Shown here: piece by piece, positions 746-26,611 of the stretch | How positions within the stretch are numbered: the stretch's first letter is position 1 | Layout of the letters: each line of letters opens with the position of its first letter | Assembly (NCBI GenBank): GCA_000708835.1 | Contig: DF237340.1 | Location: 1-64,000, forward strand | Direction of reading: 5' to 3' | Length of the DNA stretch: 64,000 nucleotides | Source of the DNA: Klebsormidium nitens | Taxonomy: Eukaryota; Plantae; Klebsormidiophyceae | Translations under genes and position numbers: made by a program | Notes under the pieces: model-generated | Told to the model about the DNA's origin: nothing | The model's database searches: none | The model's input: only the letters and a program-made list of their open reading frames with translations

Positions 746-749
746 GGTC
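746..749. other. Left target-site duplication GGTC of element 1
   Basis: attagGGTC|TGCCGTG; identical 4-mer at 16746-16749. Confidence 0.85.
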
Positions 750-877
750 TGCCGTGCGCTACTCGGCTACTGCCGGTCCTCATGGGGTCCGGCGTTACGC
801 ACCGTAGATTGGCTCAGACCCAAAGCTAGGACAAATTAAAAGTCCCCCTTCAGCTATTCCATACAAGCCGTTCCACT
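750..877 (-). repeat. Element 1 repeat B2 (128 bp, 3'-terminal)
   Basis: Direct repeat of 1453-1580 with 1 mismatch (acaAatt/acaGatt). Confidence 0.97.
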
Positions 878-1450
878 AGCAACCATGCACAGGTTCTACA
901 GGACATGATGGGCAAAGGGATAGCTGGTTTGGTACTCGCTTATAACCTCTCAAGCATTACACATGCCCGGTGATTCCTCATGCTCATGTTGCTTCGGCTC
1001 CAACAAAGCCACATGCTCCGGCTCGCTCATGCTATCCTCACCATGCAATTGGCCGACAGGATCGCCACGCTCGCACGCAATGCTGTTGAATCAGGCTCAG
1101 AGAAGAGGAAGCTCGGGCGCCATTTGCTTGAATCAAGAGAGAGACTTGCAACTTTAGGAATGACACATCCGGTCGCAAAGTTCGCACCTAGTGTCACTCT
1201 AACCGTGCTGCACTAGCCTAGTCTCAGACTACTGTACAGCCTAAGCCCTAGCTCCGGCTAGTCTCGTTATGGTTTGAACTCGGCCGATGGTGACATTTGG
1301 CGCGGTTCCTCCGGCAAGCCTAGCCTAGTGTACATCAAATATAGGATATACTCTAGGCTATAGCCTATGTCTGCCGGGCCTTCCTACGCTGCTCCGGCCG
1401 CGGGTGCGCGCGCGCCGCGTCCTCCGGCACGCCGCTGGTCCGGCATGGCA
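878..1450 (-). repeat. Element 1 repeat A2 (573 bp)
   Basis: Direct repeat of 16173-16745 (offset 15295), about 10 mismatches counted by eye. Confidence 0.97.
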
Positions 1451-1452
1451 GC

Positions 1453-1580
1453 TGCCGTGCGCTACTCGGCTACTGCCGGTCCTCATGGGGTCCGGCGTTA
1501 CGCACCGTAGATTGGCTCAGACCCAAAGCTAGGACAGATTAAAAGTCCCCCTTCAGCTATTCCATACAAGCCGTTCCACT
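1453..1580 (-). repeat. Element 1 repeat B1 (128 bp), abutting the PPT
   Basis: Copy of 750-877, separated from A2 by a GC dinucleotide (1451-1452). Confidence 0.97.
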
Positions 1581-1592
1581 TCCCCCCCACTC
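1581..1592 (-). promoter_or_regulatory. Polypurine tract (plus-strand primer site) of element 1
   Basis: Sense GAGTGGGGGGGA, just after the INT-PHD stop and directly abutting B1. Confidence 0.8.
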
Positions 1593-1623
1593 GCTGGCCA
1601 CGGCCTCCGTGGCTTCCGGCGAG

Positions 1624-2148
1624 TTATCCTTGCTGCGCGCCTTCCGCGCAGCTGGGGCACAACCATACTCCGGCCGGTACTTCCTTGACCGCCAGCTCCA
1701 AACACCCCATGTGGTACCCGTCCATACAGTAGTCACACAACAGCATGGCTCCCTGTCGGTTTGGGCTCTTGCACACTTGACAGACATGGCCCGCCGTCAC
1801 CGTGGTTAGGGTGGGATCGACCGCGGTGTCGATGTTGGGGTTATGGCACGGCGCGCAGTTCTCCAGGTGCTCTTTGAACAGGGTTCCGTCTGCCCCCTGC
1901 AACACCAACCGCCCGTTGGCCCCCACTTGGTAGACTTTGTAAGCCCCCCGCGTCACCGCGACGTCCGTCTTGTCCAGAGGAGCTCGCCGGAGGTAGACCA
2001 AGTCCCCGACTTCAAACTTCGGCTGGAACCTCGTCTTCCGGACGTGTTCGTACCGTCGTTGGTCTCGTTTCTGCGCCGCCAACAGGTTCCCCAGGGCTAA
2101 GGGGATCTCCCGCCGGAGGACTTCCGCCCGCTGCTCGCACGCCGTCGC
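1624..2148 (-). pseudogene. pol: Integrase C-terminus (SH3-like region) plus PHD finger, element 1
   Basis: FQPKFEVGDLVYLRR...; PHD CQVC...LLCDYC..GYHMGCL....VPAGVWLCPSC. In frame with 2149..4230 but separated by a TAG at 2149-2151. Confidence 0.9.
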
Positions 2149-4230
2149 CTACGTCTCTGGATCGTCGAAGTCCATCGGCTCTCCCACCAGTTGTTTAACC
2201 GCCTCGCCGGTGAGCATGGGATGCCGGCCGTAGAGGAGGTAGTAAGGGGAGTAGCCGTTGAGGGCGGTTTGGGGACTCATCCGGTACCCCATGGCGAGGT
2301 AGGGCAGCCACTCATCCCAGTTGCGCCGGTCGGCGTCGGTGCCGATTTTGGTTACCCCTTGGATGATGGAGTAGACCAACCGCTCCGTCAGCCCGTTGGC
2401 CTGGGGGTGGTAGCGCGATGTAGTCCGGTGGTCGAGGTAGAGCTTCTGGCAGAGGGTGTCGAACTCCCCCTCGAACTCCTTCCCGTTGTCCGTGAGGACT
2501 TCTGCGCATGCCCCAAATCGTGTTAGTATGCCAAGGAAAACCTCTGCCACCTTTGCTGAGTGTTTGCTCGGCAGGGCCACCAGCTCGCACCATTTGGAGA
2601 AGTGCTCGACGATGACCAAGACGAACCGCTTCTTTGTCCGCGTCATCAGCAGCGGGCCCGCGAAGTCGAGACTCCACCGGTAGCCTTGCCCCATGATTGG
2701 TAGACTCTGCATCCCCGACATCTTGACGTTGAGGCTCGCTTTGGTGCGTTCGCACTGTGGGCAGCTGGAGACGCCGTGGCTCACCGTGTCGTACATCCCC
2801 GGCCACCAGTATGCTCGCCGGAGGAGCTGCGCCGTGCGCTTCTCCCCCCAGTGGCCCGTGTAGTCGTGGATTTTCCGAACCACATTCAACCGCTCCGACG
2901 GTTCTGGCACAACGCGCTCTTCCCCCCCTGCCAGACGGCGGAGGAGGACGTCCTTGGATGCGGTTTCTGTTTCAACCCCCTCCTGGAGTCTGTGGAACGT
3001 TACCCCGCTGGCGAACCGGTAGGACGCTGCCCGGGCGCGAACCCGTCGTTCCTCCGGCTTACCCCAGGTTTCGCGGAGCCGGCCGGTGTTAAGGAACTCG
3101 AGGGTGTGCGCGTCTTCCCAGATGTCTGTGCGCGCGCGCGCCTGGTTCCCCCCCAGATCGCCGTCCGCCGGAACAGGGAGGTTTGTGTCCACCGCTCCGT
3201 AGTCGCTGGGGCCCGGGATGGGGAGTTCCGACGGCAGGTTCTCGTAGTCGTGGGTTCCCGGCTCGTAGACCTCCCCCCCGGCTTCTTCCATACTCAGGGG
3301 CTCGGCCCCCTCTCGAGGTTCTGTGGCCTCGCTGGCCTGCCAGGCTAGCAAGGCCGATGGTCTTGTCCCCCCCCCAGCCGCTTCCTCCCCGGCCGCCGGA
3401 GGATCCTCGTGGACTCGGGCGCCGGTTAAGTCGTCGGTCTCGGGCAGAGGGCTCCGGCTCAGGCCATCGGCGTTCATGTTGATGAGGCCCTTGCGGTACT
3501 TGACCTCGAACTCGAATTCCTGCAGCATCAACGCCCATCTTGCGTGCATGCCGGTTAAGTTTGGGCTTGTCATGAGCCACTCAAGTGGCCGATGATCAGT
3601 GTAGAGGATGAACTTCCGTCCATACAAGTACACTCGGAAGTACCTCACACCCCAGACTGCCGCCAAGCATTCTCCGGCGTAACTGCTATAGTTACTTTCT
3701 GCCCGGTTGTTGCTCCGGCTGGCATAAGCAACCACTCTCTCCTCCCCAGCATCATCTCGCTGTTGCAGAATGGCACCGCACCCAGCGGCACTCCAGTCTG
3801 TGTGCAACTCGTAGTCACGGGAGGGGTCGGGTCTCACCAGAAGTGGCGCGCTTGTCAGCATCGTCTTCGGGGAATCCACCGCCGTCTTGCACTCCTCCAG
3901 CAGGTCTCCTAGGAAATCCACATCCTTTTTTAGCAAGTCGTTTAGCGGCCGTGCCACTGCGCTACACCCCTTTAGGAACTTCCGGTAGTAGTTCACTATG
4001 CCCAGGAACTGCTTAACCGCCGTCACACTGGTGGGGTAGGGGATGCGCTGAATGGCCTCCACTTTGACCGCTCCGGGGTTTGAGACCGACTGGGTTGACC
4101 AAGTGCCCAAGAAAGGGAATCTCGGGGAAGAGAATGCGGATTTTCCGCGGGTGTACCTTGATGTTGTGCCGCCGTAGCTCCTGGAACACGGCCCGCAGCG
4201 CCGCCAGGTGGTCGGTGAAGCCACGCGCAT
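2149..4230 (-). pseudogene. pol: RT connection, RNase H and integrase core, element 1
   Basis: RH: ELHTDWS..., GECLAAVW, LYTDHRPL. INT: HDYTGHWG..CPQC, then WSLDFAGP / LTDNGKEF / NGLTER (D,D,E). Frameshifted relative to RT near 4070. Confidence 0.93.
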
Positions 4231-5398
4231 GGACGCTGATGTCGTCGATGAAAGCGCGCGCCACCTTCCGCAGCTGCCGCAGGACCCGGTCCATCAGCCG
4301 CTGGAACAGCGCCGGCGCGTTCTTGGGCCCGAAGGGGGTCCGCAGGGGCATGTAGATGTCGTCGTGCCCCCAGAACGCCAGCTTCCACTCGTCCCCCTCC
4401 CTGATGCGGATTTGATGGTAGCCCATCCGCAGGTCCAGGGTGGAAAAGCAGTCGCTCCCCCCCAGGTCGTCAAACAGCTCGTCGGCCACCGGCATGGGGT
4501 ATTTGTCGGGGACGGTTTTGTCGTTGTGGGGCCGGTAGTCCCCGCACATGCGCCGCTCGGTCCAGTTTCCTTCGGCGTCCTTCTTGCGGGGCATGACCGT
4601 CGCTGCCACGAAGGGCTCTTTGACCCCCGGCGGCAGCTTCAACGGCGCGATCAGCTTGGCAGCCAGCCGCTCCTCAACGTAGGCCTTTAACAGCTCCGTC
4701 TCGTAGGGGGAGTACCGTCGGCGGGGGCTCCAGATGGGTTTGTCGTCCGTAAACTCCACCTCGAATTCCACCCCGTCGATCGCTGTGTCGCTGAGGTCGT
4801 AGATGGACCAGGCGAACACATCCGACATCTCCTCCAAGAGTTCCTTGACTGCCTCCCGTTGCTCCGGCTGTAGCCCCGGCCAAATCTGCTCGTCACCCCA
4901 CTCAAACGGTTTCTCCGACCCCTTTGCTCCGAATTGGCTCGCCCCTTTCTCTGCCGGTGCCTTCCCTGCCGCTTGCGCCTGCAGCTTTGGCACTATCTCT
5001 CTTCCTCCTTCGGCAAGTGACCGCAGCCCCTCTAGGCCACTCCCCTTACCGTCCTTTCCTTCAGCCTTGTTGTTGACCGGGTCAGGCTCCCGGCGTTGCT
5101 CTTGCGAGCCCTTGGTGGGCTCTCCTCCTGCGCCTTCCTCCGGCGCCGCCCGTCTTCCAGAGACTGCAACTCGCCCTAGGGACCCCCGGCCCCTCTCTCC
5201 TTCTCCTTCCGCAGCCGATGTGGCCTCTCCCCGCACTGATCCGTTCTCTGAAATTTCCGGGCTCCTACCGTTTTTACCGTTTTTCCCCTTCTGCCCCCCC
5301 CCCCAGCTGCGTGTAGACGCTCCGGCGGCGCGCCAGCTGAGTTGGCCTGTGGCGGTTTTGTTGAGGATGACCCGCCTGAACACCCTTAGTGCGGGGGC
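4013..5398 (-). pseudogene. pol: Reverse transcriptase, element 1
   Basis: RRMCGDYRPHN, PDKYPMP, FSTLDLRMGYHQI, PFGPKNAPALFQRLM, AFIDDI. Confidence 0.93.
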
Positions 5399-5418
5399 TT
5401 AGGGGCCCCCGCGTCCCT

Positions 5419-8400
5419 TCAATCTTCATCGTAGTTGAGGACCCGCCAGCGGCGGATCTCCTTGCACAACCAATAGAAAGCGCGAACGTCAATCGCTGCT
5501 CCCACCAACCTCCGGCGGTTGGCTTCGGTCAACCCTGGTGCCGCGGTTGACCCTGGAATGAGGCCCATTATCCGCTCTCGTTCGTTGGCGTTGGGCTCAT
5601 CCCACTCCCGCTTGTTGCGGTCGTATCTCATGCCAGGCCCGGGGCGATCAGGCCCCTGGAAACGGAAGGCGTATGAACCAGGCGTTGCGACGAGGGTGGG
5701 GAAGACGCGGATTGGCTCACCGGCGACGTTCATCGGAAAGTAACCCCGAACCCTTGGGTCGTCCTCCAGGGCACTCTGCACCGTGAGGAAGGGCTCCAGC
5801 ACGTCCCTGGCTTCAACCTTGTTCATCGCTTGACCGCAATCGTACTCGTCGTAGCGAGCCTGAATCAGGGGTCCCGGCGCTAAGTTAGTCCAGAAGGTGC
5901 GCACCCTGTGAGCCGCAGAACCCAACTTAGCCGCGTCAATCAGAATTCCCTGCCCTGGTTGTCCCCCGCAGATGGCGTCCAGCTGCTCAAACCCCCACCG
6001 CGCGGGTGGAGAGGGGTGGTCACTTGCGTCGACCATCTCGAAGATGAAGCCCACGTCAAACCCCCATGGACGTTGGATTTGCTGAAGCGTGTCCAAGATG
6101 CGCCAAGCCTCAACGATCAGGCCTGACCGATCATCTTCCAACCCCAAAGCTTGGCGGTTGGCGCGGGAGAAGCCTTGGCAGGGGGAGGAGATAGTTACCA
6201 GATTGATGGGGTCTTGGCACTCGGAGCCGACGGCCCGCCGAAGCTCCCGCTCGCCCACCTCCCGGATGTCCCACGGCATGGAAGACTGCGTGGTGTGGAA
6301 CGCCTGGGGGCCCAGCTGCTCCGGGTATCGGTGGTGCAGATCCCGCAGCCTGGTGCCGAAGGCGATGCGCGCCCCCGGGTCGTTCTCCACGTAGAACAGC
6401 CGCTTGATGTAGAGGCCCGCCCGCAGGAGGCCCTTCAACTCCGCGCCAATGCCGCCGAAGAGCAGCATGACGGTGATGTACAGGCCCTCCGCAAAGATGG
6501 GGCTGAACGTGGGGACGCTGTTGAGCCCCACCGTCTCCCGGTAGTAGGCGGTGCGGCTGCCGATAACGCTCAGCTCCTGGCCCACCGGCGGTTGCGTAAG
6601 CAGGCCCTGGGGAAGGCCGTCCCAGGGTGCGTCGGCGGCCGGAGGGACCCCGTCCTCCAGGGCGTCGGGATCCGCCTCGGCCACCGGAGCTATCTCGTCC
6701 TCCCCGACCTCCACCACTGGGGGCTCCCTCCGGCGCTGATTCTGCATTAGAAGGAGATCGTCCATCTGGGGGAAATCCCTGTTTCGGAAGTTCCCGATCC
6801 GTTCCCAGTTGCGCTCCATCCAGAACTGCTCCTCCAGGGAGCGAGGATGGACAGCCAGGAACTCGTACAGCTCGCGGTAGTAGATGTGGCTGGTCTGCAG
6901 TCGGTAGTCCCAGCCCGGGGGTGGCTCCGGCCGCCCCCACTCATCCTGCCGACGCATGTAGTTGAGCGCCGGAGGAGGGTAGCCCTCTAGGCTACCCCAC
7001 AGGGGTGACACCCCATGCACCAACTCTCTGTGTGCCACCTCCTGGGGGTCAACTGGTCCCGCCGGATCAGGGATGCCCGCAAGTAGCTTAGAGAGGTGGG
7101 TGTGGCAACTGACCAGGGTCCGCTTGAACGCCGGCTGGAAGCCCCGTCGTTCTTCCCTGCTGACCACCAGGCCAGGGCGCGCCAGCAGGTACCGCGGAGT
7201 GTCCACCGAGTGCTGCATGTCGTTGCGGGTCTGGCGCCGGAGGCACGTCACGATGTTCCGCACGTGCACCGAGTTGTGGCGCTGCGCAGCGCCGTTCGCC
7301 ATAACCTGCTCCAAACGTCGTGCGGTGGAGTCAGCTTCTCCACCACTGAGGCCCAAGCGCGCCGCCCTAGGGCAGACCTGCACCATGTCCTCTAGCCTTA
7401 AGGCCCTCCTTTCCCGTACACTCCAGTCTAACGCCTGGTGTAGCTGGGCCTCCCAACTGCGCACTGACTCCATCACCGCGAACTCCTCGTTGTGAAAGTC
7501 CAGCCACGCCAAGTACACCAGGATGAGGGTGTAGATTTGGGCCAGCTCCCGACGGCGCTGAACCATCTCGGGATGCCACTCCGGCAACTTCCACTGCCCA
7601 AACAGAGAGTCCTCCAAGTCCGTTGCAAGCCGGTGAAGTCGCGCCCTCTCCTCGTCCCAGTTAGAGCGGCTCACCGCGGAGCGCCCAACTTGGCCCGTCG
7701 CGATGTACTCCAACCACCAGATCCACCGCTCGTCCATTGGGTATGGGGCCACGAAGCGGAAGTCGGGGTCGTCCCTGTAGTAAACCCCATGCCACCCTTC
7801 ATGCTCCACCGCCACTACCGGCGCTGGGTCCCCCAGCCGCTCCAGCTCCATCTGCCCGACGGGTTCTAAGTCGGGCAGGCTGTCGGGCGTGCTGCTCCGG
7901 CTACTGTCAGGGCTGGCCATCTCGAGGAAGTCTGGCAGCTCGTTCAGGTCTGGGATGCTCCCCGCCGAAGAAACTACCCCGCTCTCATCCTCCGAAACTA
8001 AATCCGGCAGGCTTTCCAGTGGGGTGGGGGCCCGCTGCGGCCCGTACACTCTCCATCTGTCTACCCCCCCCTGGCGGAGGAGCATGGAGTTGTAGAATAC
8101 TTGGGGCATGTGCCGTGCCCCGGTTTCTCGCTCATACCGGATGGGTATGAAGCCTTCGGTATTTCCGGCGCCCTGTGGCCCTTCCCGCCAATGGAGCCGG
8201 TACCGGAACTGCTCTCGCCAGGCATCGACAATGCCGCCCAAAGTCCAGAGGACGACATTGCCCACCAGAAAGTCGTACGGTGCGGCCGTGATGACCGCGC
8301 GTACCTTCAGGACGGTGTCGGTTTTTGTCCCGGGGTTGAACCGGAACACCAGGGGCTCGCGTGTGACGCCGAACATCGCCGACACTTTGTCGTCAGCCAA

Positions 8401-9069
8401 GCCCAGGCGCACGGCGTCCTTGATGACGTCATCGTCTGTGAGGCCGAGCTGGGCTACCCCGGGTTTGCCGACGAGGAGGGGCATGGCGCCGGTGTCGAGG
8501 ATGGCGACCCCACGCAGGGGCTTGCCGTTGATCAACACCTCGCTCCTCGTGTTGTGGAAGATGGGGGCGCGCACGCGCTCGCGCGCCCGGTTCCCGCGGT
8601 ACGCTGGTAGGTTGCGTACCTTCTCCACCAGTGTTGCCCGTGCCGCCGGCTCCAACAGCTCCAGGATGGGGTCGAGGTTGCAGGGGCACATGGCTGAGTA
8701 GGCTTCCACCGGCATGGCGATGCTTGCGCCGGTGCTGTGGACGGGCGCCGTGGGCTGAGGGGTGCCGGCGCTGCCATGTTGGGAGGCTGGGGCGTTCTGT
8801 GCAGGGGCTGCCCGGCCCGCCGGAGGAAGTTCCACACTTGGCCCGGACCCCCCTGAAGGGTGACCGGGCCCAGACCCCGGGTCGTCATCCTTGGGGTCCC
8901 GCTGGGGCTGAACTCCCGGGTGCTCGTCCGGCGGGGGAATCCCGTACTGCCTCTTCCTCAGTTCTTCCTCACCGGGTTCCGGGGAGGAGGGCGGGGTTTG
9001 GGCGCCAGGTGTGCGACGGATAGTCGCCTCCTGCAAGACGTCCTGGAATTTCTTGAGGTGTTCTGGCCC
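5419..9069 (-). CDS. Aspartic protease, unknown ~550-aa region and C5 cytosine DNA methyltransferase, element 1
   Basis: PR: AILDTGAMPLLVG (~8470-8520). DNMT ~5419-6490: I LLFGGIG, II YVEND, IV SSPCQGFS, VI FEMV, VIII HRVRTFW, IX ERERIMG, X RRLVGAAID. In frame with 9070..10932 across a TGA. Confidence 0.88.
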   Translation of the reverse strand, partial: GPEHLKKFQDVLQEATIRRTPGAQTPPSSPEPGEEELRKRQYGIPPPDEHPGVQPQRDPKDDDPGSGPGHPSGGSGPSVELPPAGRAAPAQNAPASQHGSAGTPQPTAPVHSTGASIAMPVEAYSAMCPCNLDPILELLEPAARATLVEKVRNLPAYRGNRARERVRAPIFHNTRSEVLINGKPLRGVAILDTGAMPLLVGKPGVAQLGLTDDDVIKDAVRLGLADDKVSAMFGVTREPLVFRFNPGTKTDTVLKVRAVITAAPYDFLVGNVVLWTLGGIVDAWREQFRYRLHWREGPQGAGNTEGFIPIRYERETGARHMPQVFYNSMLLRQGGVDRWRVYGPQRAPTPLESLPDLVSEDESGVVSSAGSIPDLNELPDFLEMASPDSSRSSTPDSLPDLEPVGQMELERLGDPAPVVAVEHEGWHGVYYRDDPDFRFVAPYPMDERWIWWLEYIATGQVGRSAVSRSNWDEERARLHRLATDLEDSLFGQWKLPEWHPEMVQRRRELAQIYTLILVYLAWLDFHNEEFAVMESVRSWEAQLHQALDWSVRERRALRLEDMVQVCPRAARLGLSGGEADSTARRLEQVMANGAAQRHNSVHVRNIVTCLRRQTRNDMQHSVDTPRYLLARPGLVVSREERRGFQPAFKRTLVSCHTHLSKLLAGIPDPAGPVDPQEVAHRELVHGVSPLWGSLEGYPPPALNYMRRQDEWGRPEPPPGWDYRLQTSHIYYRELYEFLAVHPRSLEEQFWMERNWERIGNFRNRDFPQMDDLLLMQNQRRREPPVVEVGEDEIAPVAEADPDALEDGVPPAADAPWDGLPQGLLTQPPVGQELSVIGSRTAYYRETVGLNSVPTFSPIFAEGLYITVMLLFGGIGAELKGLLRAGLYIKRLFYVENDPGARIAFGTRLRDLHHRYPEQLGPQAFHTTQSSMPWDIREVGERELRRAVGSECQDPINLVTISSPCQGFSRANRQALGLEDDRSGLIVEAWRILDTLQQIQRPWGFDVGFIFEMVDASDHPSPPARWGFEQLDAICGGQPGQGILIDAAKLGSAAHRVRTFWTNLAPGPLIQARYDEYDCGQAMNKVEARDVLEPFLTVQSALEDDPRVRGYFPMNVAGEPIRVFPTLVATPGSYAFRFQGPDRPGPGMRYDRNKREWDEPNANERERIMGLIPGSTAAPGLTEANRRRLVGAAIDVRAFYWLCKEIRRWRVLNYDED

Positions 9070-11587
9070 TCAGTTAATGGGTGCCACGGTTTTGCTATAC
9101 ACCTCCCGCCCAACCCGTATGGCAATTTCTTGGGCCACCTGTTCCCATGGCACCATCCGATTTTCGACATTGCAGGACCCGGCAGGCGCTGCGTCAAAGA
9201 CGGCTGAGCCTGAGGGGACCGCCAGAGGGACTTCTGGAGCGACGTCTGTCCCCGACGCTAAAGCCCCGCCCCCTCCTAGATCTTTTCCCCTGTCTCCCGG
9301 GCTGTCTCCCTTCCCGCCGGCTTCGTGGCCCTCGCCGTTACTGCCCGTCCGTTCCCCGGTAGGCTTCCCCGGGGCTAAGGGTGTTCCTTCTGGCGCCGGC
9401 GGTTTGGCGGGCGCTGGAGGCGGGGGTGGCGGCGGTGGCGGCGCCAGTGGAGAGGAACTGGGCCCCACATGGACCGTCTGCAGGCCCGGGTCCTCAACGT
9501 TGGCCATGAAGGCCTCCACGGCTGCGGGGTCAGCCGTCGGTCCGAAGCTGGGGACGGTGTGTCCGCTGCTCACTGCTCCGGCCGGCCCAAAACTCCGTTC
9601 AGAAAAAAAGAGAAGAATATGGGCGGCTTCCGTATCCGGGTGTTGAACGAAGTCAGGAAGCTCAGAGAAGACTCCCATATACGAGGAAGAGGGTGATCGC
9701 ACCTTCCCATTTTGTCCTTGTGCGGCCCCCTCTTCAAAGTCTTCAGGGGGGGTGGAGTAACCATGCTGGTCCTCCCCGCCCAGGAGTGCTGCCGCCTCCA
9801 ATGGCGCAACCGCCTTCGCGGCGGGCTTTCCCCCCGTCTTCCGTGTGGGGCGCTGTTTGCGCCCCTCACCCGCCGTGTCCGCTGGGCCTTTCCCTGAGCT
9901 AGCCGGGGGTGGGATTTCGGCAGGCGGGCTGGGGGCTCGTCCTCCGGCCGTCTGCGTTAGGCCCCCTTCCTCCGGCCCGGTTTCCGCCGGTGGGTTGGGC
10001 TCCTTGGTCCCTTCCGGCTGCTCCTCCTCGGACGGGCTCGGTTTACGTTCCGGTTCCCCCTCCGGCGGCCACGGGGCCCGCTCCACCCCTTCGTCCGGCT
10101 CTTCCCCCGGCACGTCGTTACTCACCGCTCCCCATCCTCCGAGGGCCATCGTGTCGTTCATGAGCTGCCCGTCGTACATGTCTTCCTTGTGCCCAATGGG
10201 AGGTCGCCATCCCAGGTAGTAGGTGTTGGCCTCCCGCCGGAGGAGCACTTGCAGCTGGCTCAGCTTCTGGGGGTGCGCGTTTCCGCTCCACTCCAGGCCT
10301 GCGACGCGCTCCAGGGCGATGTTGAGGGCGATCTGCTCACGGACCTGGGACTCCGAGGGAAACCTGTTCCCAGCGGGCGGAAGTCCATAGACGAACGGTC
10401 CCCCTTCCTTCCAGAACCATCGGGTTTGCGCCTCGTAAGAGGCGGGGTAGGGAACGGTGGAGAACTTGGGGTAGTCGGCCGCACGCGGCGCTCCGGCCTC
10501 GTCCAGCCACCGCTTCCAGACTGGGTCCTCCCCGACTGCTACTTCCTTCTCCGGCGGCACTGTCGGGCGCCCAGCTGCTGCTTCGGCGGCCGGGTCGAAG
10601 TCGTCACCTGCGTAGGAGTACCATGGCCGGCGGTGAGTGGCGCTGTTCTCCTCCGCAAAGCCCGCCCGCTTCGCATACGCGATCTCTACCACCCTCCCGC
10701 GCGCCCATATGGGGTCGATGAGGGATTCCCGGCGCTCAGGGGAGGCATGGGATAGGGCGAAAATGAGGAGGCCCCGGTACTCGTCCCGATAGTAGTCGGG
10801 GGACTGGTCCACCAGGGCAGGAAACTCCCGCCGGTCCGCCTCACGTTGGTAGAACGGATCCTCCGTGGTGGGCACCGTCTTGAAGACCTCGTCGAACCGC
10901 ACCACCCAGTCTTCCTTCTCCAGGCCCGCCACTCGCGCTTGTGCCGCCTGCAGGTCGGGGTCGTTGTGGTTGAAGGCTCCCGGAAGGGGTCCCCCGAGGT
11001 ATTCCCAGGGTTCTCCTTGGTTTCGGCTTCCGCCTCCGGCTCTCCTCCAGGACCCCCCGGCTCCGCAGTTTGCTGCTCCTCCGGCGCGTCTTCAGGGCGA
11101 ACCTCAGCTTCCCCTACTCCCGTGGCTTGCTGCCCCTTGGCCTCTTCTTTGCCTTCTTGGTTGGCGGGGCGTCCACCACCGCCGTGCCCTCCTTCTCGTG
11201 CTCTGTTTCCGCTTTTTCTCCCGCCGGAACAGGCCTCTTACCCCGCTTCTCCTTGACTGCTGACTTAGGCTCTGAAGGTTCCTCCGGCGGCGCCTTCTTC
11301 TTGCCCTTGTCCTGAGTGTCGGTTTTCTGCCCAGTGGCTGCAGGGAGTGGTTTCTCCGGGGGCTTGGGAACAACCTTCTTCTCCTCCGATTGCTTGCCAC
11401 CCTTCTGTGCCGAGGTGGATTTCTCCACCTTGACCTCCTGCAGGTTCACGGGCATTCCGGGGCTGATCCAGGGGTTGGGGTGGAAGGGCGGGACTTTGGA
11501 TTTAACCGATCCTGATCTTGCCCACCCCTCAGCTGTGAGCGCGGCTTGTGCGCTTTCAGCTGATCCCGGTGGGAAGATCCCCCGTGA
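9070..11587 (-). pseudogene. Unknown protein-coding cargo between gag and PR, element 1 (includes 620-aa ORF 9070..10932)
   Basis: Long open frames with GC-rich coding-like composition, in frame with the flanking ORFs across TGA stops. Probable frameshift(s) near 11000-11120. No domain recognised. Confidence 0.6.
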
Positions 11588-14500
11588 TCAAAGGAATTGC
11601 ATTTTAGGGCGCTTGGGGGGAGGGGTTGGGGTGCGGGTGCGTTCCCCCCCCTTTTCCTCGCTGGATGACGGCGTGGCTTCCTCGTCGTCCTCATCCGGCG
11701 TAAGGTACCCCCCCAACTTGGCCAGCCCGGCCTTGGCGTTAAGCTTTTTGCGCGCTGATTCGAGGCGGGCGTGCTCTTGGTTTGCCGTTTCAGGGCTCGC
11801 CTGCGCCAGTTTGAGCAACAGGTTATCGACGTTCTCCTCCAGCTCCCGCACCTCGATCCGAATCACTGATACGTCGAAAATCTCCACACCAGGCTCAAAG
11901 GTTAGGATGGGGCCCTCCTCCGGCGCCTTCCTCAGCCGGGCCTCCAGCTTCCTGGCCCGCCGGAGGACCTCCTTGCTCCCGTTGACACCCTCAATCGCCC
12001 CGGCTTGACGCAAAGAGCTGGCCAGCTTCCTGAGGCCGTCGATGCGCACCTGCTCGCCGGTGGGGTCGAGTCGAAGGGTGGGTGGAGGCTCCACACTGCG
12101 GGACCGCTGTCGCTGTTGGTGTCCTGTTGACAGCTCTCCGGCGCCCTCGTCCGCTGGGTCGTTCTTGGCCCGCCGTGGACGCTTGGTTTGGGGGCTGGCT
12201 GACCGGGCGCGCCGTTCTTCTCCGGCCACCTGTCGCTTCTCCCGCCCCGACCGCCGCGCCAGGATGGGCTTGTCCTCGCCCTCGCTGGCCTTACCGCCCA
12301 GGCCCTTCCGGCTTGCGGTTGGAGAAGGCTTGGAGGCACCGCCCCCTTTTGTCTCCTTGGGGCCCGGTTGCTTCGGCCGAGGGGGTGCGCCGATTGGCAC
12401 CACCCGTGGGAGATTTTCCCCTTTCACGTGGGTGGGGGCGGGGGACACGCGCTTGTCGGGCTCCGTGGAGTGCCCCCCCCACTGCCCGTGTGGCACGTCG
12501 TAGTCGTCGACCTTCCAAGTTTCCCGGTAGGTGGTGTCCTCCCGGTCGTCATCGTCGCGCACATACTTCTGGTACGCGTAGAGGGGGTCCGTCCCCCAGG
12601 CAGCGTACAGATTGGCCTTGTACTGTCCCCACGGGATGACGCGCCCCCTGTTGTGGGTGTCGCCCTTCTTCAGCTCAAGCTCCTCCTCCGGCAGGGGGCC
12701 CACCTGGATAGGCGTGTTGTCGTCCCAGCCACCGTGCCACGCGTGGAGGAGTCGCCGGTGGAACAGCACCATCTCAGACAGGTCCGGCTTGGGCGGGGCC
12801 TTCTTGGACGCTGGCCGCCCGTGCAGCTCGCGGCAGTACTCAAGGATGGACCGACCCGCATAGTGCAGGGCCAGCAGGACGTAGCATTGCGTCCTGGTGG
12901 GCCGCTTGGCGAACATGAACTCCGCTGCCCGCGTGACGTACTCCCGGCCCCAGTGGGTTATGTAGCCCGCGAACTCGTCGTTGTGCATGACGGCCCAGGA
13001 TTGTCGCTCCCGCCAGTCTCGTGGACTCCAGCACATGCACCTGAAATCCGGGTGCCAAGGAGGGTGACCGGTTTTGCCCCCTTGGAGGCCGGCCTTGCTC
13101 TCGTCCTGGGCTGCGTGCGCCAGCATGTAGTTCAGGTGCTGGATGAACGCCATCTGCCCCTTGTACCGCGGGGCCTGCATCGGGGGCAGGTAGATGTCCA
13201 GTTTGTGCGGGGGGAGATGCGGGTCGTCGTCCACCACCGGGTCGGGGTACTCCTCCATGGCCCAGGTGTGGTTGTCGGCGTGGGTGGGATCGGCTGCGGC
13301 CAACCACTGATCCTTGAACGGACCAGCGACGATGTTGAACCAGTTTTCGCCGAGGGTTATGACGTCGTCAAACTTGCTGATGACGGTCTCTCCTCCCTGT
13401 GCTCCGCCAGCTCCTCCGGCCGCACCGCCTGCTTCTTCCTCCGGCTCGTCCTCGCCTGACTGCTCCACTGACCCCGAGCCCGCCTGCTCGGACTCCTCCT
13501 CCACGCTCTCACGCTCCGAGTCATCCGCCTCCCCCTCCGCGTCTTCGTCTCCCTCCTCGACGCCGGGCTGCTCCACATCCTCGGGGTCATCTTCGTCCCC
13601 CTCGCCGTCGTCATCGTCAGCTCCGCCAACGCAGCGCATGGGCTTCGCAGGACCGAGGTAGGACAGGGGGATGGAGGACGCTTGGACCTCCAGACTGTAG
13701 GCCGGAGGAAGGGTCTCGAACGGGGCTGCCCGTTTAACCTGCACCTCCCGTTGGGGCCCGACCTTGGGGTCATTCAGCATGTGGACCTGCACCCCTGCGT
13801 TCTCGAGGGACTCGATCCCCTGATAGCGGGGGTCGTTGGGGGAATACTCCCCAAAGGAAGGGGGCAGCTTCTGGGCGACCAGGGGCGTTGGCTCAGGCTC
13901 GGCGGGGCCTTCGGCTTCCTCCGGCTCAGCTCTGGTCTCCCCCCCGGCCTCCTCAGCTGCTGCGACAGGGCGATCGCCATGTGGGCGGAAGGCTGGGGGT
14001 GGGCCGCCCTTCCGCAGACGATCCTCCTTGGCTCTGGCCGCCAGCCGGTCCTTCTCCCCGCGTGCCCGCGGTGCCGTGGTTGTCTCGCGCTGCGCCTTGG
14101 TTGACGCGCGCACCTCCGGCAGCTCGTGGTCTTCGTCCGCCAGGTAGACGCCCATGTAGGGGACGCCTGGCTGCTCGATGACGGCCGACCACGCCAGCTC
14201 AGGGTCGAACTCCTCCGTGGCTGGCGCGTTGTGCTCCACCGCATCGGCGGCGTAGGCATGCTTGGGGGCTCCGCGGTTGCTCCGGCCGCCCGCACCAGGT
14301 TTGCCCTTGCCGCTGTCGCCGGACCCGCGCCACTTCTCCGGCCGCTTCTCGGGAATCGCCTCCCAGCACTCGTGGGACTCGTGGGAGTCCCTACGCTTGC
14401 AGTGCTTGCAGACCGCCCCTGGCATCCGCGGCCCCTTTGCCTCCGGCTTCTTCTTGCACTCCGTGCGTGTGTGGCCGTACTCGCCACAGTTGAAGCAGTT

Positions 14501-15714
14501 GCCCTTGAACCCCGTTCCCAGTGCCGGAGGCTCCATGGCGGCTAAGGCTTGCTTGGGTTTTCCCCGGCCTCGCCGCTCTCTCTCTTTGGGACCGCGTTCT
14601 GCTCGGGGTTTGTTGGACTCTCTCTGAGAGCCCGGGGACTTGCTGGAGAGGCTCAGGTCCTGCAATTTGGAGGAGAGGGGTTTGCCGGTGGTTTTGTCGG
14701 CCCGCTCCAGCTCACGTGCATGAAGAGCGTCCTCCACCTGCCTGGCCTCTTGCTCCAACTTGTCTAGGGTACAATCGGCAACAGCCCACTTGAGAACATC
14801 GTTCTCTATCGCACGCCGCACCTCCCCCCTAAGCGCTTTCAACGCTTTCTCAGTCACCTCCCTGCCGATGGTGGGCTTACCGTTCTTCCGGCAGAGCTCC
14901 CGCAAGAGGTGAAACGTGGCGTGAGTGCTCCTCCCCGCCGTGTACTTGAAGTTGAGGTATTCGCCCAGCGTCTGAGCGGTGTTCTCCGGATAGGTGGTCT
15001 GCAGGAAAGCCCAGGTTTCGGTCATGAGCGTGGGGTCCCCCTTTGCTACCTTCCGTGGCCAGGAAGGCACTGGGCCTGGCGGCGCGTCCGTGTTCGCCTT
15101 CCACTGCTCATGCCACTTCTCTGCGAGAAGTTTCTCCTCTACCTTCCGGTTTTCAGCCTCCACTTCCTCCCGCGCCTTCGCATTCTCTTCCAGACGCGTA
15201 CGGAATTTATCCTGGAGAACGTGGTATGCGTCCCCCTCACAAAGATCACTGCAAACTTGTCTTCATCAGTGAGAGTGGCCGCCGTAGCACTGCGGCGAGA
15301 CCGGATAAGCTGCAGGCGATTCTCATAAGTGAGCCGGAGGTCTGTGACACTCTGGCCCCCTACACGCCCACTAAACTTTCCACCGAAGCTCCCTGTGGAG
15401 CTACCCCCTGTCTCCTCCATATCCCAGCTGTCTTCCCAGTCCTCAACTCCTAAGAAGGAGACTGCTACGGCCGGAAGCACAACAGTGTTGCCCTGCTCCT
15501 CTGCCGATTCCGACGCACTGGTGGAAAGAGGGGTTTCAGGGATGATCTCACCAGCTGGGTTTTCTTCAGGTGAACCTTGACCACCCTCGGATGTCTCCGC
15601 TGCCGCCGTGGACTGTCCCTCACCCTTCGCTCCCTGCCCAAACCTCCGAAGAAAGTAAGGCGGGTCCCCTTCAGCCCCGCTGCTTTCCGCTGGCTGATCA
15701 GAGGGAGGCTGCAT
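11588..15714 (-). pseudogene. gag: Gag with zinc knuckles plus long C-terminal extension, element 1
   Basis: ATG at 15714. Probable 1-bp loss in a G run near 15232 joins ORFs 15139..15720 and 11588..15163. Knuckles CFNCGEYGHTRTEC and CKHCKRRDSHESHEC. Confidence 0.82.
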
Positions 15715-16152
15715 AAGCAATCAAAGAGTTTGCAAAATGCCCCTTACACCCTTGGTTCCTTGTAGCCAAAGGTTAAAACCTTACTCCCACACTCAGAGAT
15801 GTGGTTTCAGCTGCTCCGGCGCCCGTATTACGCCAACTGCAGGAGCTCCCGAGGCCCCACCCACTGCTTACTCAAGCAATGCTGGCTACCCCTGAGCTGT
15901 GCTAGCTCAATCAACCACGTGGGCAGTCCGCCGGAGGACCGCAGACACTGGTTGGAGCTGAGGGTGGCTCACCGTTGTGGCTTGCCGCTCGGACCGAGAA
16001 CCCTTGATCCCCGTACTCCTTGCACCCCCACTTAGCTTGAGCACCCAAGCAAACTGCTTGCCGCTGCAAAGAGAAAAATGATCCTCCAGGTTTGGACCAA
16101 TCAAAGTTCCCCCTTGCTAACCTTGCGAGAAGCACCTAACAGCCACCACCCA

Positions 16153-16172
16153 TCATTCCTAAAGTTGCAAGT
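16153..16172 (-). promoter_or_regulatory. Primer-binding-site position, self-complementary to A repeat (not a recognisable tRNA PBS)
   Basis: Abuts A1. Perfect 20-bp reverse complement of 16439-16458 (also 1144-1163). Confidence 0.8.
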
Positions 16173-16745
16173 AGCAACCATGCACAGGTTCTACAGGACA
16201 TGATGGGCAAAGGGATAGCTGGTTTGGTACTCGCTTATAACCTCTCAAGCATTACACATGCCCGGTGATTCCTCATGCTCATGTTGCTTCGGCTCCAACA
16301 AAGCCACATGCTCCGGCTCGCTCATGCTATCCTCACCATGCAATTGGCCGACAGGATCGCCACGCTCGCACGCAATGCTGTTGAATCAGGCTCAGAGAGA
16401 AGGAAGCTCGGGCGCCATTTGCTTGAATCAAGAGAGAGACTTGCAACTTTAGGAATGACACATCCGGTCGCAAAGTTCGCACCTAGTGTCACTCTAACAG
16501 TACTGCACTAGCCTAGTCTCAGACCCTTGTACAGCCTAAGCCCTAGCTCTGGCTAGTCTCGTCATGGTTTGAACTCGGCCGATGGTGACATTTGGCGCGG
16601 TTCCTCCGGCAAGCCTAGCCTAGTGTACATCGAATATAGGATATACTCTAGGCTATAGCCTATGTCTGCCGGGCCTTCCTACGCTGCTCCGGCCGCGGGT
16701 GCGCGCGCGCCGCGTCCTCCGGCACGCCGCTGGTCCGGCATGGCA
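16173..16745 (-). repeat. Element 1 repeat A1 (573 bp, 5'-terminal)
   Basis: Direct repeat of 878-1450. No B sequence on either side. Confidence 0.97.
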
Positions 16746-16749
16746 GGTC
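16746..16749. other. Right target-site duplication GGTC of element 1
   Basis: CATGGCA|GGTCattg; matches 746-749. Confidence 0.85.
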
Positions 16750-18578: not shown

Positions 18579-19523
18579 ATGAGTTGGAGATACAATTTGC
18601 GTAGCGGTCCTGAGTTTCCACACCGCGACCCGAACGTCGGACTTGGCAGTGACACTGGCCTTGATAACATTGATTATAACCAAGGCAGTAGTTCGAGTCC
18701 GACCCCTCATTCGCCGCGCGAATTATTGCACGATTCCGGGCACTCTGATTTTGCACCGCAGCTTGTGCGTGCATCATACTTGCCGACAGGCGCGCCCGCC
18801 TTTGTCGAGCCGTTTGATATAGCCGAATTAGACACCATGTCGCTACTGAATGTACAGCATGGTACATGACTCTTTACGGGACTCCCGGACGGCCCAAGTA
18901 TCTTGCACTTGCGCCAGAATTATGCGACGCTCAAGACGGAGCTCAAGCTCAAGCCGAATTCTGAGCTTATCAACGATAATGACAGGTTCAACCTGCTCAT
19001 GAAGTTCTTAGCCGGGGGGGCACGCGATCAGGCCGCCCACCTCGAGCGTGAGATGCGCGAAGAACTGCGCACCCGGAATGCTGCTCAGGCCGACTTATAT
19101 CTGCGGAATAAGACGGCATATGAGAAGGCGAAGACCGATTATGACGCTCTGTCAGCCGAAGCTAAGGCAGCCGCGACCGAACCGGTCCGGCCGGAGCCGC
19201 ATGTGGACGCAGAGGTCTATGATCAGCCGGTCGAGAAGTTCTGGGCTATGATGGAAAAGCTTTATCCAGAGAAGTCAACGACTCGGATGGATGAGTTCCG
19301 CTATTTTGCGCGACGCTCCGAGGAGACTATCGCTAGCCTCGTACAGCGCATGCAGTCATTGAAGCATGCCCTCGACCGCCCAGAGGAGATGGCCGTATTC
19401 AAGCTCATAGGAGCTATGCCCCGCCACTTGGGCGAGGAAGTTACGCGCCAGTTGAACGCCACAGCCATGGAGCCTGAGGAATGGACCATTGAGCTCGTGG
19501 GCCGGGTTGCAATTAAGCCTTGA
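18579..19523 (+). pseudogene. gag: Gag capsid region, element 2
   Basis: ORFs 18579..18869 and 18903..19523 are in the same frame, split by a TGA. Helical gag-like sequence, frameshifted into the CCHC ORF near 19520. Confidence 0.7.
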
Positions 19524-22459: not shown

Positions 22460-22669
22460 ATGATCCAGAAAGCTGATGGCTCTTGGGATGAACCCACCGC
22501 TCTGGAACGCGAGCGCGCTATGGGCTTCATGGACGGGACCACTCACGTCTGTCCCTCCATCTCTGAGGCGGATCGGCGACGGATCCTGGGAAGCACGATG
22601 GACATGCACAGCCTCCACTTTCTGGTTGGCAGCATCCACTGCTTCCAGGCAGCCTTTTTCACCGATTGA
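22460..22669 (+). pseudogene. DNMT C-terminus (motifs IX-X), element 2
   Basis: WDEPTALERERAMGF...EADRRRILGSTMD aligns with element 1 WDEPNANERERIMGL...EANRRRLVGAAID. Confidence 0.88.
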
Positions 22670-22950
22670 CGGTTTGCCCGGCGCAACGAACTCGAGTCAG
22701 AGCGTTGTGACCGAATAGACGACGGCACTGTTACGCCAGAACGAGTTGCCAAGTTCGTGCAAGATGGCCTGCTGCGCCACCGCAAGCTGCGCACCCCTGC
22801 TGACCCTAGCACAGCCTCAGGAATTTCACTTGAGCTAGGGGGGGAAGAGTAGGAACGCCGTCAGAAGGAACGGCTCCGAGGGAACCTCCAGAATCGAGGC
22901 CTTCGAGTAAAATTCGGGAGAACGCTTCTTGCGAGAAGACCCTGAATGAG

Positions 22951-24207: not shown

Positions 24208-24233
24208 GCACTGCCGGCTATTATCGGCGCTAT

Positions 24234-26403: not shown

Positions 26404-26466
26404 GGCGTGTTGGCATGTACCACACTGTGACTCCCTGGTTTCCGCTCAGTCGGGACGACTTCGCCC

Positions 26467-26609: not shown

Positions 26610-26611
26610 GC

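What the first reader, a model, noticed from the sequence alone, without database searches (positions are those of the whole stretch)
750..16745. Ty3/Gypsy retrotransposon with a DDE integrase but split direct repeats (A1...B1-A2-B2) instead of LTRs
Seen: in element sense the layout is A1 (573 bp), PBS, gag/pol, PPT, B1 (128 bp), GC, A2, B2. It ends TG...CA with a 4-bp GGTC TSD. The pol has an rve-type D,D,E integrase, and I recognise no tyrosine recombinase. Established: A1-ORFs-B1-A2-B2 split repeats are the hallmark of tyrosine-recombinase PAT/TOC1/Ngaro retroelements, which insert from circles; DDE LTR elements normally insert linear cDNA with two identical LTRs. Inference: the PPT and PBS define the true LTR as B-GC-A, and the integrated form is exactly what results if a 2-LTR circle is opened at the CA-GC-TG site of the PBS-proximal LTR. 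That would be a hybrid retrotransposition route (circle intermediate plus DDE integration) that I do not know to be described.
Basis: partly seen in the sequence, partly recalled or inferred. Interest (0 to 1): 0.96.

Follow-up and report, generated by a model that had tools for sequence, protein, structure and literature searches.

The report
Circularly permuted Ty3/gypsy retrotransposon (KnitGypsy-Dnmt3)
This is a real algal Ty3/gypsy retrotransposon whose integrated copies are a circular permutation of the DNA its reverse transcriptase should make; the odd repeat layout was noted in one line for this same genome in 2018, but how an ordinary DDE integrase inserts it was never explained.

Summary
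On the minus strand, window 750-16745 reads A1(573)-PBS-gag/PR-DNMT/RT-RH-IN-PHD-PPT-B1(128)-GC-A2-B2. It has TG...CA ends and a 4-bp duplication (GACC in element sense).

The window is Klebsormidium nitens scaffold DF237340.1. The element belongs to the published KnitGypsy-Dnmt3 group. De Mendoza et al. 2018 already wrote that it has DIRS-like repeats on a Gypsy body. The architecture is therefore not new, but no mechanism was published.

New evidence here:
- Eight independent elements show the same layout wherever an end is visible. They come from K. nitens, metagenomes and Closterium, with IN-ORF identity down to about 41%.
- All eight visible B-A junctions carry the spacer CA-GC-TG.
- All 3 elements with both flanks have a 4-bp TSD (GACC, TGAA, AAAT).
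- The integrase has an intact DDE triad and is Ty3-like. No tyrosine recombinase was found.
- A G-rich PPT abuts B.
- A 14-20-nt self-priming PBS abuts A. In five families 96 of 96 positions pair and 10 pairs covary.

The reverse-transcription LTR is therefore B-GC-A. The integrase must use an internal palindrome after the cDNA ends are joined. A 2-LTR circle is the simplest route, but it is inferred, not shown. All 7 visible 3' ends and 5 visible 5' ends are the replication-competent permutation. That argues against random choice between the two palindromes.

The parts
16746..16749 (-). Target-site duplication copy at the element's 5' side (GACC in element sense, GGTC on + strand)
   Evidence: identical 4 nt at 746-749
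16173..16745 (-). A1 repeat (573 nt). It starts TGCCATGCC and holds the predicted promoter, R and U5.
   Evidence: 98.3% identical to A2, no gaps
16439..16458 (-). Segment inside A1 that is the perfect reverse complement of the PBS. It is the predicted 5' end of the genomic RNA, which acts as the self-primer. The same segment lies in A2 at 1144-1163.
16153..16172 (-). Primer-binding site, self-priming type, directly abutting the end of A1
   Evidence: 19-20 nt perfect complement; 96/96 cells Watson-Crick paired in 5 families, 10 pairs covary
11591..15720 (-). gag region: ORFs 15142-15720 and 11591-15163. It has a CCHC zinc knuckle (below Pfam's gathering score). It also has a family-conserved helical domain of unknown function at 12587-13195.
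9073..10932 (-). 620-aa ORF with no family hit, not conserved in relatives; probably a fast-evolving linker or not functional
5422..9036 (-). ORF with aspartic protease (N-terminal part) and Dnmt3-like C5 cytosine methyltransferase (C-terminal part)
   Evidence: Both Pfam hits are below the gathering score in this copy (DNA_methylase 19.0 vs 22 bits; Asp_protease_2 13.7 vs 24.3). Both are above it in the Closterium relative.
4016..5383 (-). Reverse transcriptase ORF. It overlaps the next ORF in another frame, so this copy carries a frameshift.
2152..4230 (-). RNase H plus integrase (H2C2 zinc domain and rve core with D521, D582, E617)
1627..2082 (-). C-terminal extension of the integrase with a PHD finger. 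In this copy an in-frame stop separates it from IN.
   Evidence: a single ORF in relative L001
1581..1592 (-). Polypurine tract GAGTGGGGGGGA directly abutting B1
   Evidence: a G-run abuts B in all 8 families with a 3' end
1453..1580 (-). B1 repeat (128 nt): the start of U3 of the reverse-transcription LTR. It ends ..GGCA.
1447..1456 (.). Palindrome GGCA-GC-TGCC at the B1/A2 junction (GC spacer at 1451-1452). This is the proposed internal integrase site.
   Evidence: the CA-GC-TG spacer is invariant in 8/8 families
878..1450 (-). A2 repeat (573 nt)
750..877 (-). B2 repeat (128 nt). It is joined to the end of A2 exactly where the two cDNA termini would meet, and it ends ..GGCA.
746..749 (-). 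Target-site duplication copy at the element's 3' side

Best explanation
The element is a member of the KnitGypsy-Dnmt3 clade of Ty3/gypsy retrotransposons of streptophyte algae. Its chromosomal form is a circular permutation of its reverse-transcription product.

Shown:
- The PPT abuts B, and a self-complementary PBS abuts the end of A.
- Ordinary strand transfers must therefore yield a linear cDNA (B-GC-A)-PBS-internal-PPT-(B-GC-A). Its termini (AGT.. and ..GCT) are not integrase ends.
- The chromosomal copy is A-PBS-internal-PPT-B-GC-A-B. It has TG..CA ends, short terminal inverted repeats and a 4-bp target duplication. These are the marks of a DDE integrase.
- A2|B2 is exactly cDNA right end joined to cDNA left end.

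Inferred:
- The two cDNA termini become joined. The simplest form is a 2-LTR circle.
- The integrase cuts after CA on both strands of the internal palindrome CA-GC-TG of the PBS-proximal LTR. This gives two 3'-OH CA ends with 2-nt 5' GC overhangs, the same geometry as 3'-processed retroviral ends.
- The integrase then inserts these ends with a 4-bp stagger.

Only this permutation keeps a copy of A (with R) downstream of the PPT, so only it can make a terminally redundant RNA for the next cycle.

Transcription is predicted to start inside A at the segment complementary to the PBS. The first 19-20 nt of the RNA would fold back and prime minus-strand synthesis, as in Tf1.
For: - Exact anatomy in the window.
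- Same anatomy in independent elements:
  - ENA contig_36358, L008 and L001. The contig begins 6 nt inside A1 and ends exactly at the B2 CA.
  - JGI Ga0590114_0001474, L010 and L003.
  - L009, 5' end with flank.
  - L011 and K. nitens L012.
  - The second element in the window.
  - Closterium L014.
- TSDs: GACC, TGAA and AAAT, in 3 of 3 elements with both flanks.
- The GC spacer is invariant, and A-start/B-end terminal inverted repeats match at 5-10 of 12 positions.
- The integrase is Ty3-like with a DDE triad.
- No YR by Pfam at E<=10 or by PDB searches.
- PBS: 14-20 nt of perfect complementarity starting at the first base after A in 6 families. In five families 96/96 cells are paired and 10 of 19 pairs show compensatory changes. 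The stem closes the MFE fold.
- Repeat pairs differ by 0.25-5%, so they are real old duplicates and not assembly artefacts.
- Precedent: retroviral integrases cleave palindromic LTR-LTR junctions of 2-LTR circles (PMC1180852, PMC1905944, PMC4372172).
Against: - No extrachromosomal form was or could be observed.
- A symmetric 2-LTR circle has two identical palindromes. Random choice predicts about half A-B-GC-A..B insertions, and 1-LTR circles predict A..B insertions. None was seen among 7 visible 3' ends and 5 visible 5' ends. With 8 independent elements and 50:50 choice, that outcome has probability about 1/256.
- Either site choice is directed by something unknown, or the substrate is not a free symmetric circle.
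- TSS and poly(A) site are predicted only.
- Two contigs (L002, L007) show internal-LTR-internal. This may be assembly collapse, a tandem or a circle, and cannot be resolved.
Confidence: 0.62

Rival explanations
1. Same permuted integration by the DDE integrase, but without a free covalent 2-LTR circle. One version: the integrase cuts the palindrome of the 5' LTR on linear cDNA, keeps both CA ends in one intasome and inserts them, and host end joining then seals the two original cDNA termini (A end to B start). Another version: reverse transcriptase makes the A|B junction itself by end-to-end template switching, giving a longer-than-unit cDNA.
For: - It gives the same final structure.
- Asymmetry is built in, because B is always the short arm (125-191 nt against 383-848 nt for A). 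That could explain why only one permutation is seen (7/7 and 5/5).
- The Closterium copy has 2 extra nt (TT) at A2|B2. This fits non-templated addition or an end-joining scar.
Against: There is no direct evidence. Integrase cleavage of an internal site 128-191 bp from a DNA end has no known precedent for Ty3/gypsy. The A|B junction is exact or within 1 nt in the five other elements with an A2|B2 junction.
Confidence: 0.28
2. A DIRS/PAT/Ngaro-type mechanism: a cryptic tyrosine recombinase integrates a circle, and the Gypsy-like integrase is irrelevant.
For: The A1..B1-A2-B2 layout is the hallmark of PAT-like and Ngaro elements (PMC5890265 Fig. 1e legend; PMC8557442).
Against: - 4-bp TSDs in 3/3 elements and TG..CA ends with inverted repeats. 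YR integration leaves neither.
- No Phage_integrase hit at E<=10 on any ORF of either strand.
- No PDB recombinase match for the unknown ORFs or for the one conserved unknown domain, which has no invariant R/H/Y pattern and is predicted helical.
- The repeat borders coincide with PPT and PBS, which a YR model does not require.
Confidence: 0.02
3. Secondary artefact: an assembly error, a nested or tandem insertion, or unequal recombination of a canonical LTR element produced B1-A2-B2 in this copy only.
For: The K. nitens assembly is a gapped draft scaffold assembly (N runs in the window). LTR elements often form tandems.
Against: - The same layout occurs in 8 independent elements from 5 assemblies and at least 2 algal classes, including a 1.9-Mb Closterium contig.
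- The repeat copies carry substitutions.
- TSDs flank the whole A1..B2 unit.
- The conserved GC spacer sits at every B-A junction.
Confidence: 0.02
4. The real LTR is A-B (TG..CA) and the element is canonical. The 'PBS' and 'PPT' are misidentified, and A1/B1 are remnants of truncated LTRs.
For: A starts TG and B ends CA with inverted repeats, as canonical LTR ends do.
Against: - It would need the same two truncations, at the same base, in every family.
- The G-rich tract always abuts B1, and a covarying 14-20-nt primer complement always abuts A1.
- No copy has A-B at the 5' end (5/5).
Confidence: 0.03

Closest known systems
KnitGypsy-Dnmt3 of Klebsormidium nitens (de Mendoza et al. 2018, Nat Commun, PMC5890265)
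   Same: Same genome: the window is DF237340.1. Same Gypsy-type pol carrying a Dnmt3-like methyltransferase. Same repeat layout; their Fig. 4c legend says the repeats are as in DIRS while the domains are as in Gypsy.
   Different: That paper gives one sentence and no anatomy. It has no mention of circles or target sites and no TSD hit in its supplement. I saw no description there of termini, an internal palindrome, PBS type, a mechanism or wider distribution. All of these are worked out here.
PAT-like / Ngaro / TOC1 elements of the DIRS order (tyrosine-recombinase retrotransposons)
   Same: A1-internal-B1-A2-B2 split direct repeats. The logic is the same: a copy of A downstream restores terminal redundancy. 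The circle with two B-A units is topologically the same intermediate.
   Different: Those encode a tyrosine recombinase and make no TSD. This one has a Ty3-like RT/RH and a DDE integrase, TG..CA ends, 4-bp TSDs, and repeat borders set by PPT and PBS.
Tf1/sushi and plant Tcn1 Ty3/gypsy elements (self-primed reverse transcription; PMC6317226)
   Same: The PBS directly after the LTR is complementary to a segment inside the LTR (the start of the transcript) rather than to a tRNA.
   Different: The complement here is longer (14-20 nt against 11 in Tf1, the latter from my own knowledge). The integrase carries a PHD finger instead of a chromodomain. Tf1 integrates linear cDNA with two full LTRs.
Integrase cleavage of the palindromic LTR-LTR junction of retroviral 2-LTR circles (PFV, HIV-1; PMC1180852, PMC1905944, PMC4372172)
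   Same: A DDE retroviral-type integrase cuts after CA on both strands of a palindrome in a circular viral DNA and regenerates integration-competent ends.
   Different: In retroviruses the palindrome is the circle junction itself, and the route is a side or salvage pathway. Here the palindrome lies inside each LTR, has a 2-bp rather than a 4-bp spacer, and the route would be obligatory.
Bacterial IS3/IS911, IS30 and IS256 copy-out-paste-in transposition (own knowledge, not tested here)
   Same: It works alike. A circular intermediate carries abutted inverted-repeat ends separated by a 2-3-bp spacer, and a DDE enzyme cleaves it and inserts it with a short TSD.
   Different: Those are DNA transposons with no reverse transcription and no homology beyond the RNase H-fold catalytic core.

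Membership tests
Ty3/gypsy (Metaviridae) LTR retrotransposon | pol order PR-RT-RNase H-IN, with RT/RH closest to Ty3 | tested here: met
   Pfam order. Best PDB match is Ty3 Gag-Pol 7q5b, with stretch E-values 2e-62 for RT/RH and 1.5e-15 for IN.
Ty3/gypsy (Metaviridae) LTR retrotransposon | DDE integrase with N-terminal H2C2 zinc domain | tested here: met
   Integrase_H2C2 and rve. D521, D582 and E617 are present in the window copy and aligned to the Ty3 catalytic motifs in relative P0003.
Ty3/gypsy (Metaviridae) LTR retrotransposon | PBS directly after the 5' repeat and PPT directly before the 3' repeat | tested here: met
Ty3/gypsy (Metaviridae) LTR retrotransposon | TG..CA termini and a 4-5-bp target-site duplication | tested here: met
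   GACC, TGAA and AAAT in 3/3 testable elements
Ty3/gypsy (Metaviridae) LTR retrotransposon | Two identical full-length LTRs flanking the internal region in the integrated copy | tested here: not met
   The 5' side has only A. The 3' side has B-GC-A-B. This holds in 5/5 visible 5' ends and 7/7 visible 3' ends.
DIRS order (PAT-like / Ngaro) | Encodes a tyrosine recombinase | tested here: not met
   No Phage_integrase hit at E<=10. No PDB recombinase match. The fold search of the one conserved unknown domain gave nothing, on a low-confidence model.
DIRS order (PAT-like / Ngaro) | Split direct repeats A1..B1-A2-B2 | tested here: met
DIRS order (PAT-like / Ngaro) | Integration without target-site duplication | tested here: not met
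   4-bp TSDs in 3/3 elements
KnitGypsy-Dnmt3 (de Mendoza 2018) | Gypsy element of K. nitens with a Dnmt3-type C5 methyltransferase in pol and DIRS-like repeats | tested here: met
   The window is identical to K. nitens DF237340.1. The DNA_methylase hit lies in the PR ORF: below Pfam cut-off in the window, above it in the Closterium relative, and on record for L011. The Dnmt3 subtype itself was not tested here.
Tf1/sushi-type self-priming elements | PBS complementary to the first nucleotides of the element's own transcript | tested here: inconclusive
   Complementarity to an LTR-internal segment, with covariation, is shown. Whether that segment is the transcript's 5' end needs 5' RACE.
Tf1/sushi-type self-priming elements | Chromodomain at the integrase C-terminus (chromovirus) | tested here: not met
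   A PHD finger is present instead

The most novel reading that the evidence does not exclude
A whole clade of Ty3/gypsy retrotransposons in streptophyte algae has moved its integrase recognition site from the LTR ends to a palindrome inside the LTR. It therefore must integrate from end-joined (circular) cDNA, with directed choice of the PBS-proximal site. This would be a eukaryotic retroelement counterpart of the IS-circle-junction pathway, and a DDE-based convergence on the DIRS/Ngaro replication logic. A more speculative extension is that the element's own Dnmt3 marks one CAGCTG site and so sets the choice.
Probability: 0.5. Interest if true: 0.85.

Novelty: new variant of a known kind. Interest (0 to 1): 0.72.

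Why it matters
LTR retrotransposons and retroviruses are taught to integrate linear cDNA through the ends of two identical LTRs. Circles are regarded as dead ends.

Here is a clade that is conserved from Klebsormidium to Closterium and recently active in Closterium (A copies 99.75% identical). Its chromosomal structure cannot be derived from linear cDNA without joining the cDNA ends and cutting an internal site.

If confirmed, three things follow:
- A DDE integrase can run an obligatory circle-type (or join-and-cut) pathway.
- The puzzling DIRS-like repeats on a Gypsy body, noted in 2018, get an explanation.
- There is a natural system for studying integrase cleavage of palindromic junctions.

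It also matters in practice. LTR-finding software that expects paired identical LTRs will mis-annotate or miss these elements.

Tried and rejected
- Look-up of a GTG-start ORF by DNA reference failed, because the recorded product starts with M.
- The protein-pattern scan of JGI metagenomes with the protease alignment found no relative.
- The DNA scan of metagenomes with the 21-nt junction gave 2 loci. L007 is a real relative. L006 is an unrelated chance match.
- The scan of 596 Gb of prokaryotic genomes with an 18-nt junction gave 60 hits. None encodes the element by tblastn, so all are chance.
- The unknown ORFs of the intact relative L001 have no Pfam or PDB relatives.
- The one conserved unknown domain (alignment A2) has no PDB profile hit. 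Its AlphaFold model is mostly helical with mean pLDDT 53, and Foldseek found nothing at E<0.4. It is therefore uninformative, apart from giving no hint of a recombinase.
- I looked for a TATA box upstream of the predicted start site. It was not consistent across families.
- I looked for a tRNA-type PBS, tRNAs and Rfam families in the window and found none.
- I searched for A1 of the second element in the window and for its PBS. Both are absent.
- I considered canonical LTR = A-B, nested insertion, tandem recombination and assembly artefact. The comparative data reject all four (see rivals).
Full report
**1. Observation**

The element lies on the minus strand.
- Repeat searches and a local alignment give A1 (16173-16745) and A2 (878-1450). 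They show 10 mismatches in 575 gap-free columns.
- B1 (1453-1580) and B2 (750-877) are 99% identical.
- In element sense the junctions read as follows:
  - flank ..GACC|TGCC.. (A1 start)
  - A1 end followed at once by ACTTGCAACTTTAGGAATGA
  - GAGTGGGGGGGA followed at once by B1
  - B1 ..GGCA-GC-TGCC.. A2, a 10-bp palindrome
  - A2 end joined directly to B2 start
  - B2 ..GGCA|GACC flank

**2. Coding content**

Pfam finds these domains:
- a CCHC knuckle (below cut-off) in the gag ORF
- an aspartic protease and a C5 DNA methyltransferase in ORF 5422-9036, both hits below Pfam's cut-off in this copy
- RT in 4016-5383
- RNase H, the H2C2 zinc domain and the rve core in 2152-4230
- a PHD finger in 1627-2082

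The integrase keeps D521, D582 and E617. The intact relative P0003 aligns best to the Ty3 Gag-Pol structure 7q5b, with RT/RH at 2e-62 and IN at 1.5e-15.

The window copy is slightly decayed. It has a frameshift inside RT and an in-frame stop between IN and PHD, whereas relatives have one ORF.

No tyrosine recombinase was found.
- There was no Phage_integrase hit at E<=10 on any ORF of either strand, and none at E<=1 on the ORFs of relatives L001 and L002.
- There was no PDB match for the unknown ORFs.
- The only conserved unknown domain has no invariant R/H/Y pattern, no PDB profile hit and a helical, low-confidence model without fold matches.

**3. Identity and prior art**

- Protein relatives pointed to Klebsormidium.
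- A later look-up returned K. nitens scaffold DF237340.1. It is 100% identical to the window and has the same 880-nt N run. The window is therefore positions 1-64000 of that scaffold.
- De Mendoza et al. 2018 (PMC5890265) described KnitGypsy-Dnmt3 in this genome. Their Fig. 4c legend says the repeats have the structure of a DIRS element while the domains are typical of Gypsy.
- The paper has no mention of circles or target sites. Its supplement has no TSD mention. No other paper in the library uses the name.
- The architecture is therefore published as a one-line remark. The mechanism is not.

**4. The layout is family-wide**

Seven further independent elements were examined.
- *ENA contig_36358 (L008 and L001).* It is 66-74% identical in pol. 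The contig starts 6 nt inside A1 and ends exactly at the CA of B2. A1 and A2 are 98.3% identical.
- *JGI Ga0590114_0001474 (L010 and L003).* A full element whose repeat copies are 95% identical.
- *L009.* Host flank, then TGCC.. A1, then PBS. No B lies upstream.
- *L011 and K. nitens L012.* Only 41-45% identical in the RH-IN ORF. Both read PPT-B1-..CA-GC-TG..-A2-B2-flank.
- *A second element in the window itself.* It lies on the + strand, with B1 26478-26609, GC, A2 26612-27173 and B2 27174-27306.
- *Closterium sp. NIES-65 (L014).* A complete 8.2-kb element with protease, DNMT, RT, RH-IN and PHD. Its A copies are 99.75% identical.

Across all eight elements:
- The spacer is GC in 8/8 families.
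- A starts TG(C/T)C and B ends G(G/A)CA.
- Terminal inverted repeats match at 5-10 of 12 positions.
- All three elements with both flanks have 4-bp TSDs exactly at the TG/CA ends: GACC, TGAA and AAAT. By chance this is about (1/256)^3.

Two short-read contigs (L002, L007) read internal-PPT-B-GC-A-PBS-internal. This is what assembly collapse of A1/A2, a tandem or a circle would each give.

**5. What reverse transcription should make**

A G-run PPT abuts B in every family.

The sequence that abuts the end of A is a perfect reverse complement of a segment inside A.
- It is 19-20 nt long in five families and lies 287-313 nt downstream of that segment.
- It is 14 nt long in Closterium and lies about 110 nt downstream.
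- The sequence differs between families while pairing is kept. 96 of 96 cells are Watson-Crick and 10 of 19 shared pairs have compensatory changes.
- The stem closes the minimum-energy fold of the window RNA.

This is the geometry of Tf1-type self-priming, which is known in Tf1/sushi and plant Tcn1 elements (PMC6317226). Perfect pairing without wobble is expected if the PBS is recopied from the primer in each cycle.

It follows that:
- The transcript should start inside A.
- U3 is B-GC-(first half of A).
- R-U5 is the rest of A.
- The cDNA should be (B-GC-A)-internal-(B-GC-A).
- Its ends (for example AGTGG.. and ..TTGCT) are neither inverted repeats nor TG/CA.

**6. Mechanism**

The chromosomal form A-internal-B-GC-A-B is the circular permutation of that cDNA, opened at the CA-GC-TG of the PBS-proximal LTR. 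A2|B2 is the joint of the two cDNA termini. The joint is exact in the window, within 1 nt in L003, and carries 2 extra nt (TT) in Closterium.

Cutting after CA on both strands of CA-GC-TG gives two recessed 3'-OH CA ends with 2-nt 5' overhangs. That is the same geometry as processed retroviral ends. Insertion with a 4-bp stagger explains the TSD. Retroviral integrases are known to cut palindromic 2-LTR junctions (PMC1180852, PMC1905944).

What is shown:
- the permutation relation
- the DDE signature
- conservation of the layout across families

What is inferred:
- that the ends are joined before cutting (a circle) rather than after
- that the integrase is the nuclease

Only the observed permutation keeps A downstream of the PPT, so only it can make a terminally redundant RNA.

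**7. An unexplained point**

A symmetric circle should be opened at either palindrome. 1-LTR circles should give A..B. Yet all 7 visible 3' ends are B-GC-A-B and all 5 visible 5' ends are flank|A-PBS. With 8 independent elements and 50:50 choice, that outcome has probability about 1/256. Dead-on-arrival products should persist in genomes as well as live ones do.

Either the choice is directed, or the substrate is asymmetric. One example is cutting the short B arm off linear cDNA followed by host repair. Another is an RT-made junction. I rank these as a variant rival at 0.28.

**8. Verdict**

The structural reading and the DDE route are well supported and now rest on eight elements. The circle is a reasonable but untested inference. 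The claim of being undescribed is overstated, because the layout was noted for this genome in 2018.

The element is best filed as a structurally aberrant clade within Ty3/gypsy. It works like a PAT/Ngaro element in its redundancy logic, and like an IS circle junction in its integration logic. It is a member of neither.

Noticed in passing
window 1-64000: The window is identical to Klebsormidium nitens NIES-2285 assembly GCA_000708835.1, scaffold DF237340.1, positions 1-64000. Sequence and the 880-nt N run at 21580-22459 both match. A second N run lies at 61343-61917.
   Followed up: yes
window ~18600-27306 (+ strand): A second, distantly related element (about 42% aa identity in pol) with the same 3' layout. 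It has a gag CCHC in ORF 19489-21579, RT 22951-24204, RH-IN 24234-25598 and PHD 25570-26400. Its 3' end reads PPT, B1 26478-26609, GC, A2 26612-27173, B2 27174-27306, then flank CGTG. No A1 or PBS for it exists anywhere in the window, so it is 5'-truncated or its 5' end was lost. Its 5' border could not be defined.
   Followed up: partly
window 16410-16425 (minus strand) and equivalents in L008, L009, L007: A conserved (A)ATGGCGCC motif lies about 30 nt downstream of the predicted transcript start. To my recollection it resembles the start of a tRNA-Lys-type PBS. It sits about 240 nt inside the repeat, so it cannot define the LTR end. Its function is unknown.
   Followed up: no
L014:13010-13011 (Closterium sp. 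NIES-65): Two extra nucleotides (TT) sit between the end of A2 and the start of B2. They match neither the PBS side nor the PPT side. This looks like a scar of end joining or non-templated addition.
   Followed up: partly
L002 (ENA k141_123090) and L007 (JGI Ga0310810_10039337): These contigs read internal-PPT-B-GC-A-PBS-internal. The two ends of L002 repeat each other at only 94% identity. They could be collapsed short-read assemblies, genomic tandems sharing one LTR, or circles. This is not resolvable here.
   Followed up: partly
window 1627-2082; L001:10001-13522; L014 ~12160-12402: The integrase carries a C-terminal PHD finger where chromoviruses carry a chromodomain. It is conserved from Klebsormidium to Closterium and suggests chromatin-mark-guided targeting.
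   Followed up: no
window 12587-13195 (minus strand); L001:3363-4109: A domain of about 200 aa between gag and protease is conserved at 26-41% identity in five families. It has no Pfam or PDB relative and is predicted to be mostly long helices (low confidence).
   Followed up: partly
L010:7240-7280 and L003:14877-15044: The JGI copy is inserted into a short hairpin-forming repeat (TGAACTTGAAAG...CTTTCAAGTTCA, with inverted repeats at 14878-15044). This is possibly a MITE-like sequence.
   Followed up: no
window 28662-35601 (minus strand): The public annotation of the scaffold places a PI3K-family kinase gene here (PI3K_C2, PI3Ka and PI3_PI4_kinase domains). It is ordinary host context.
   Followed up: no
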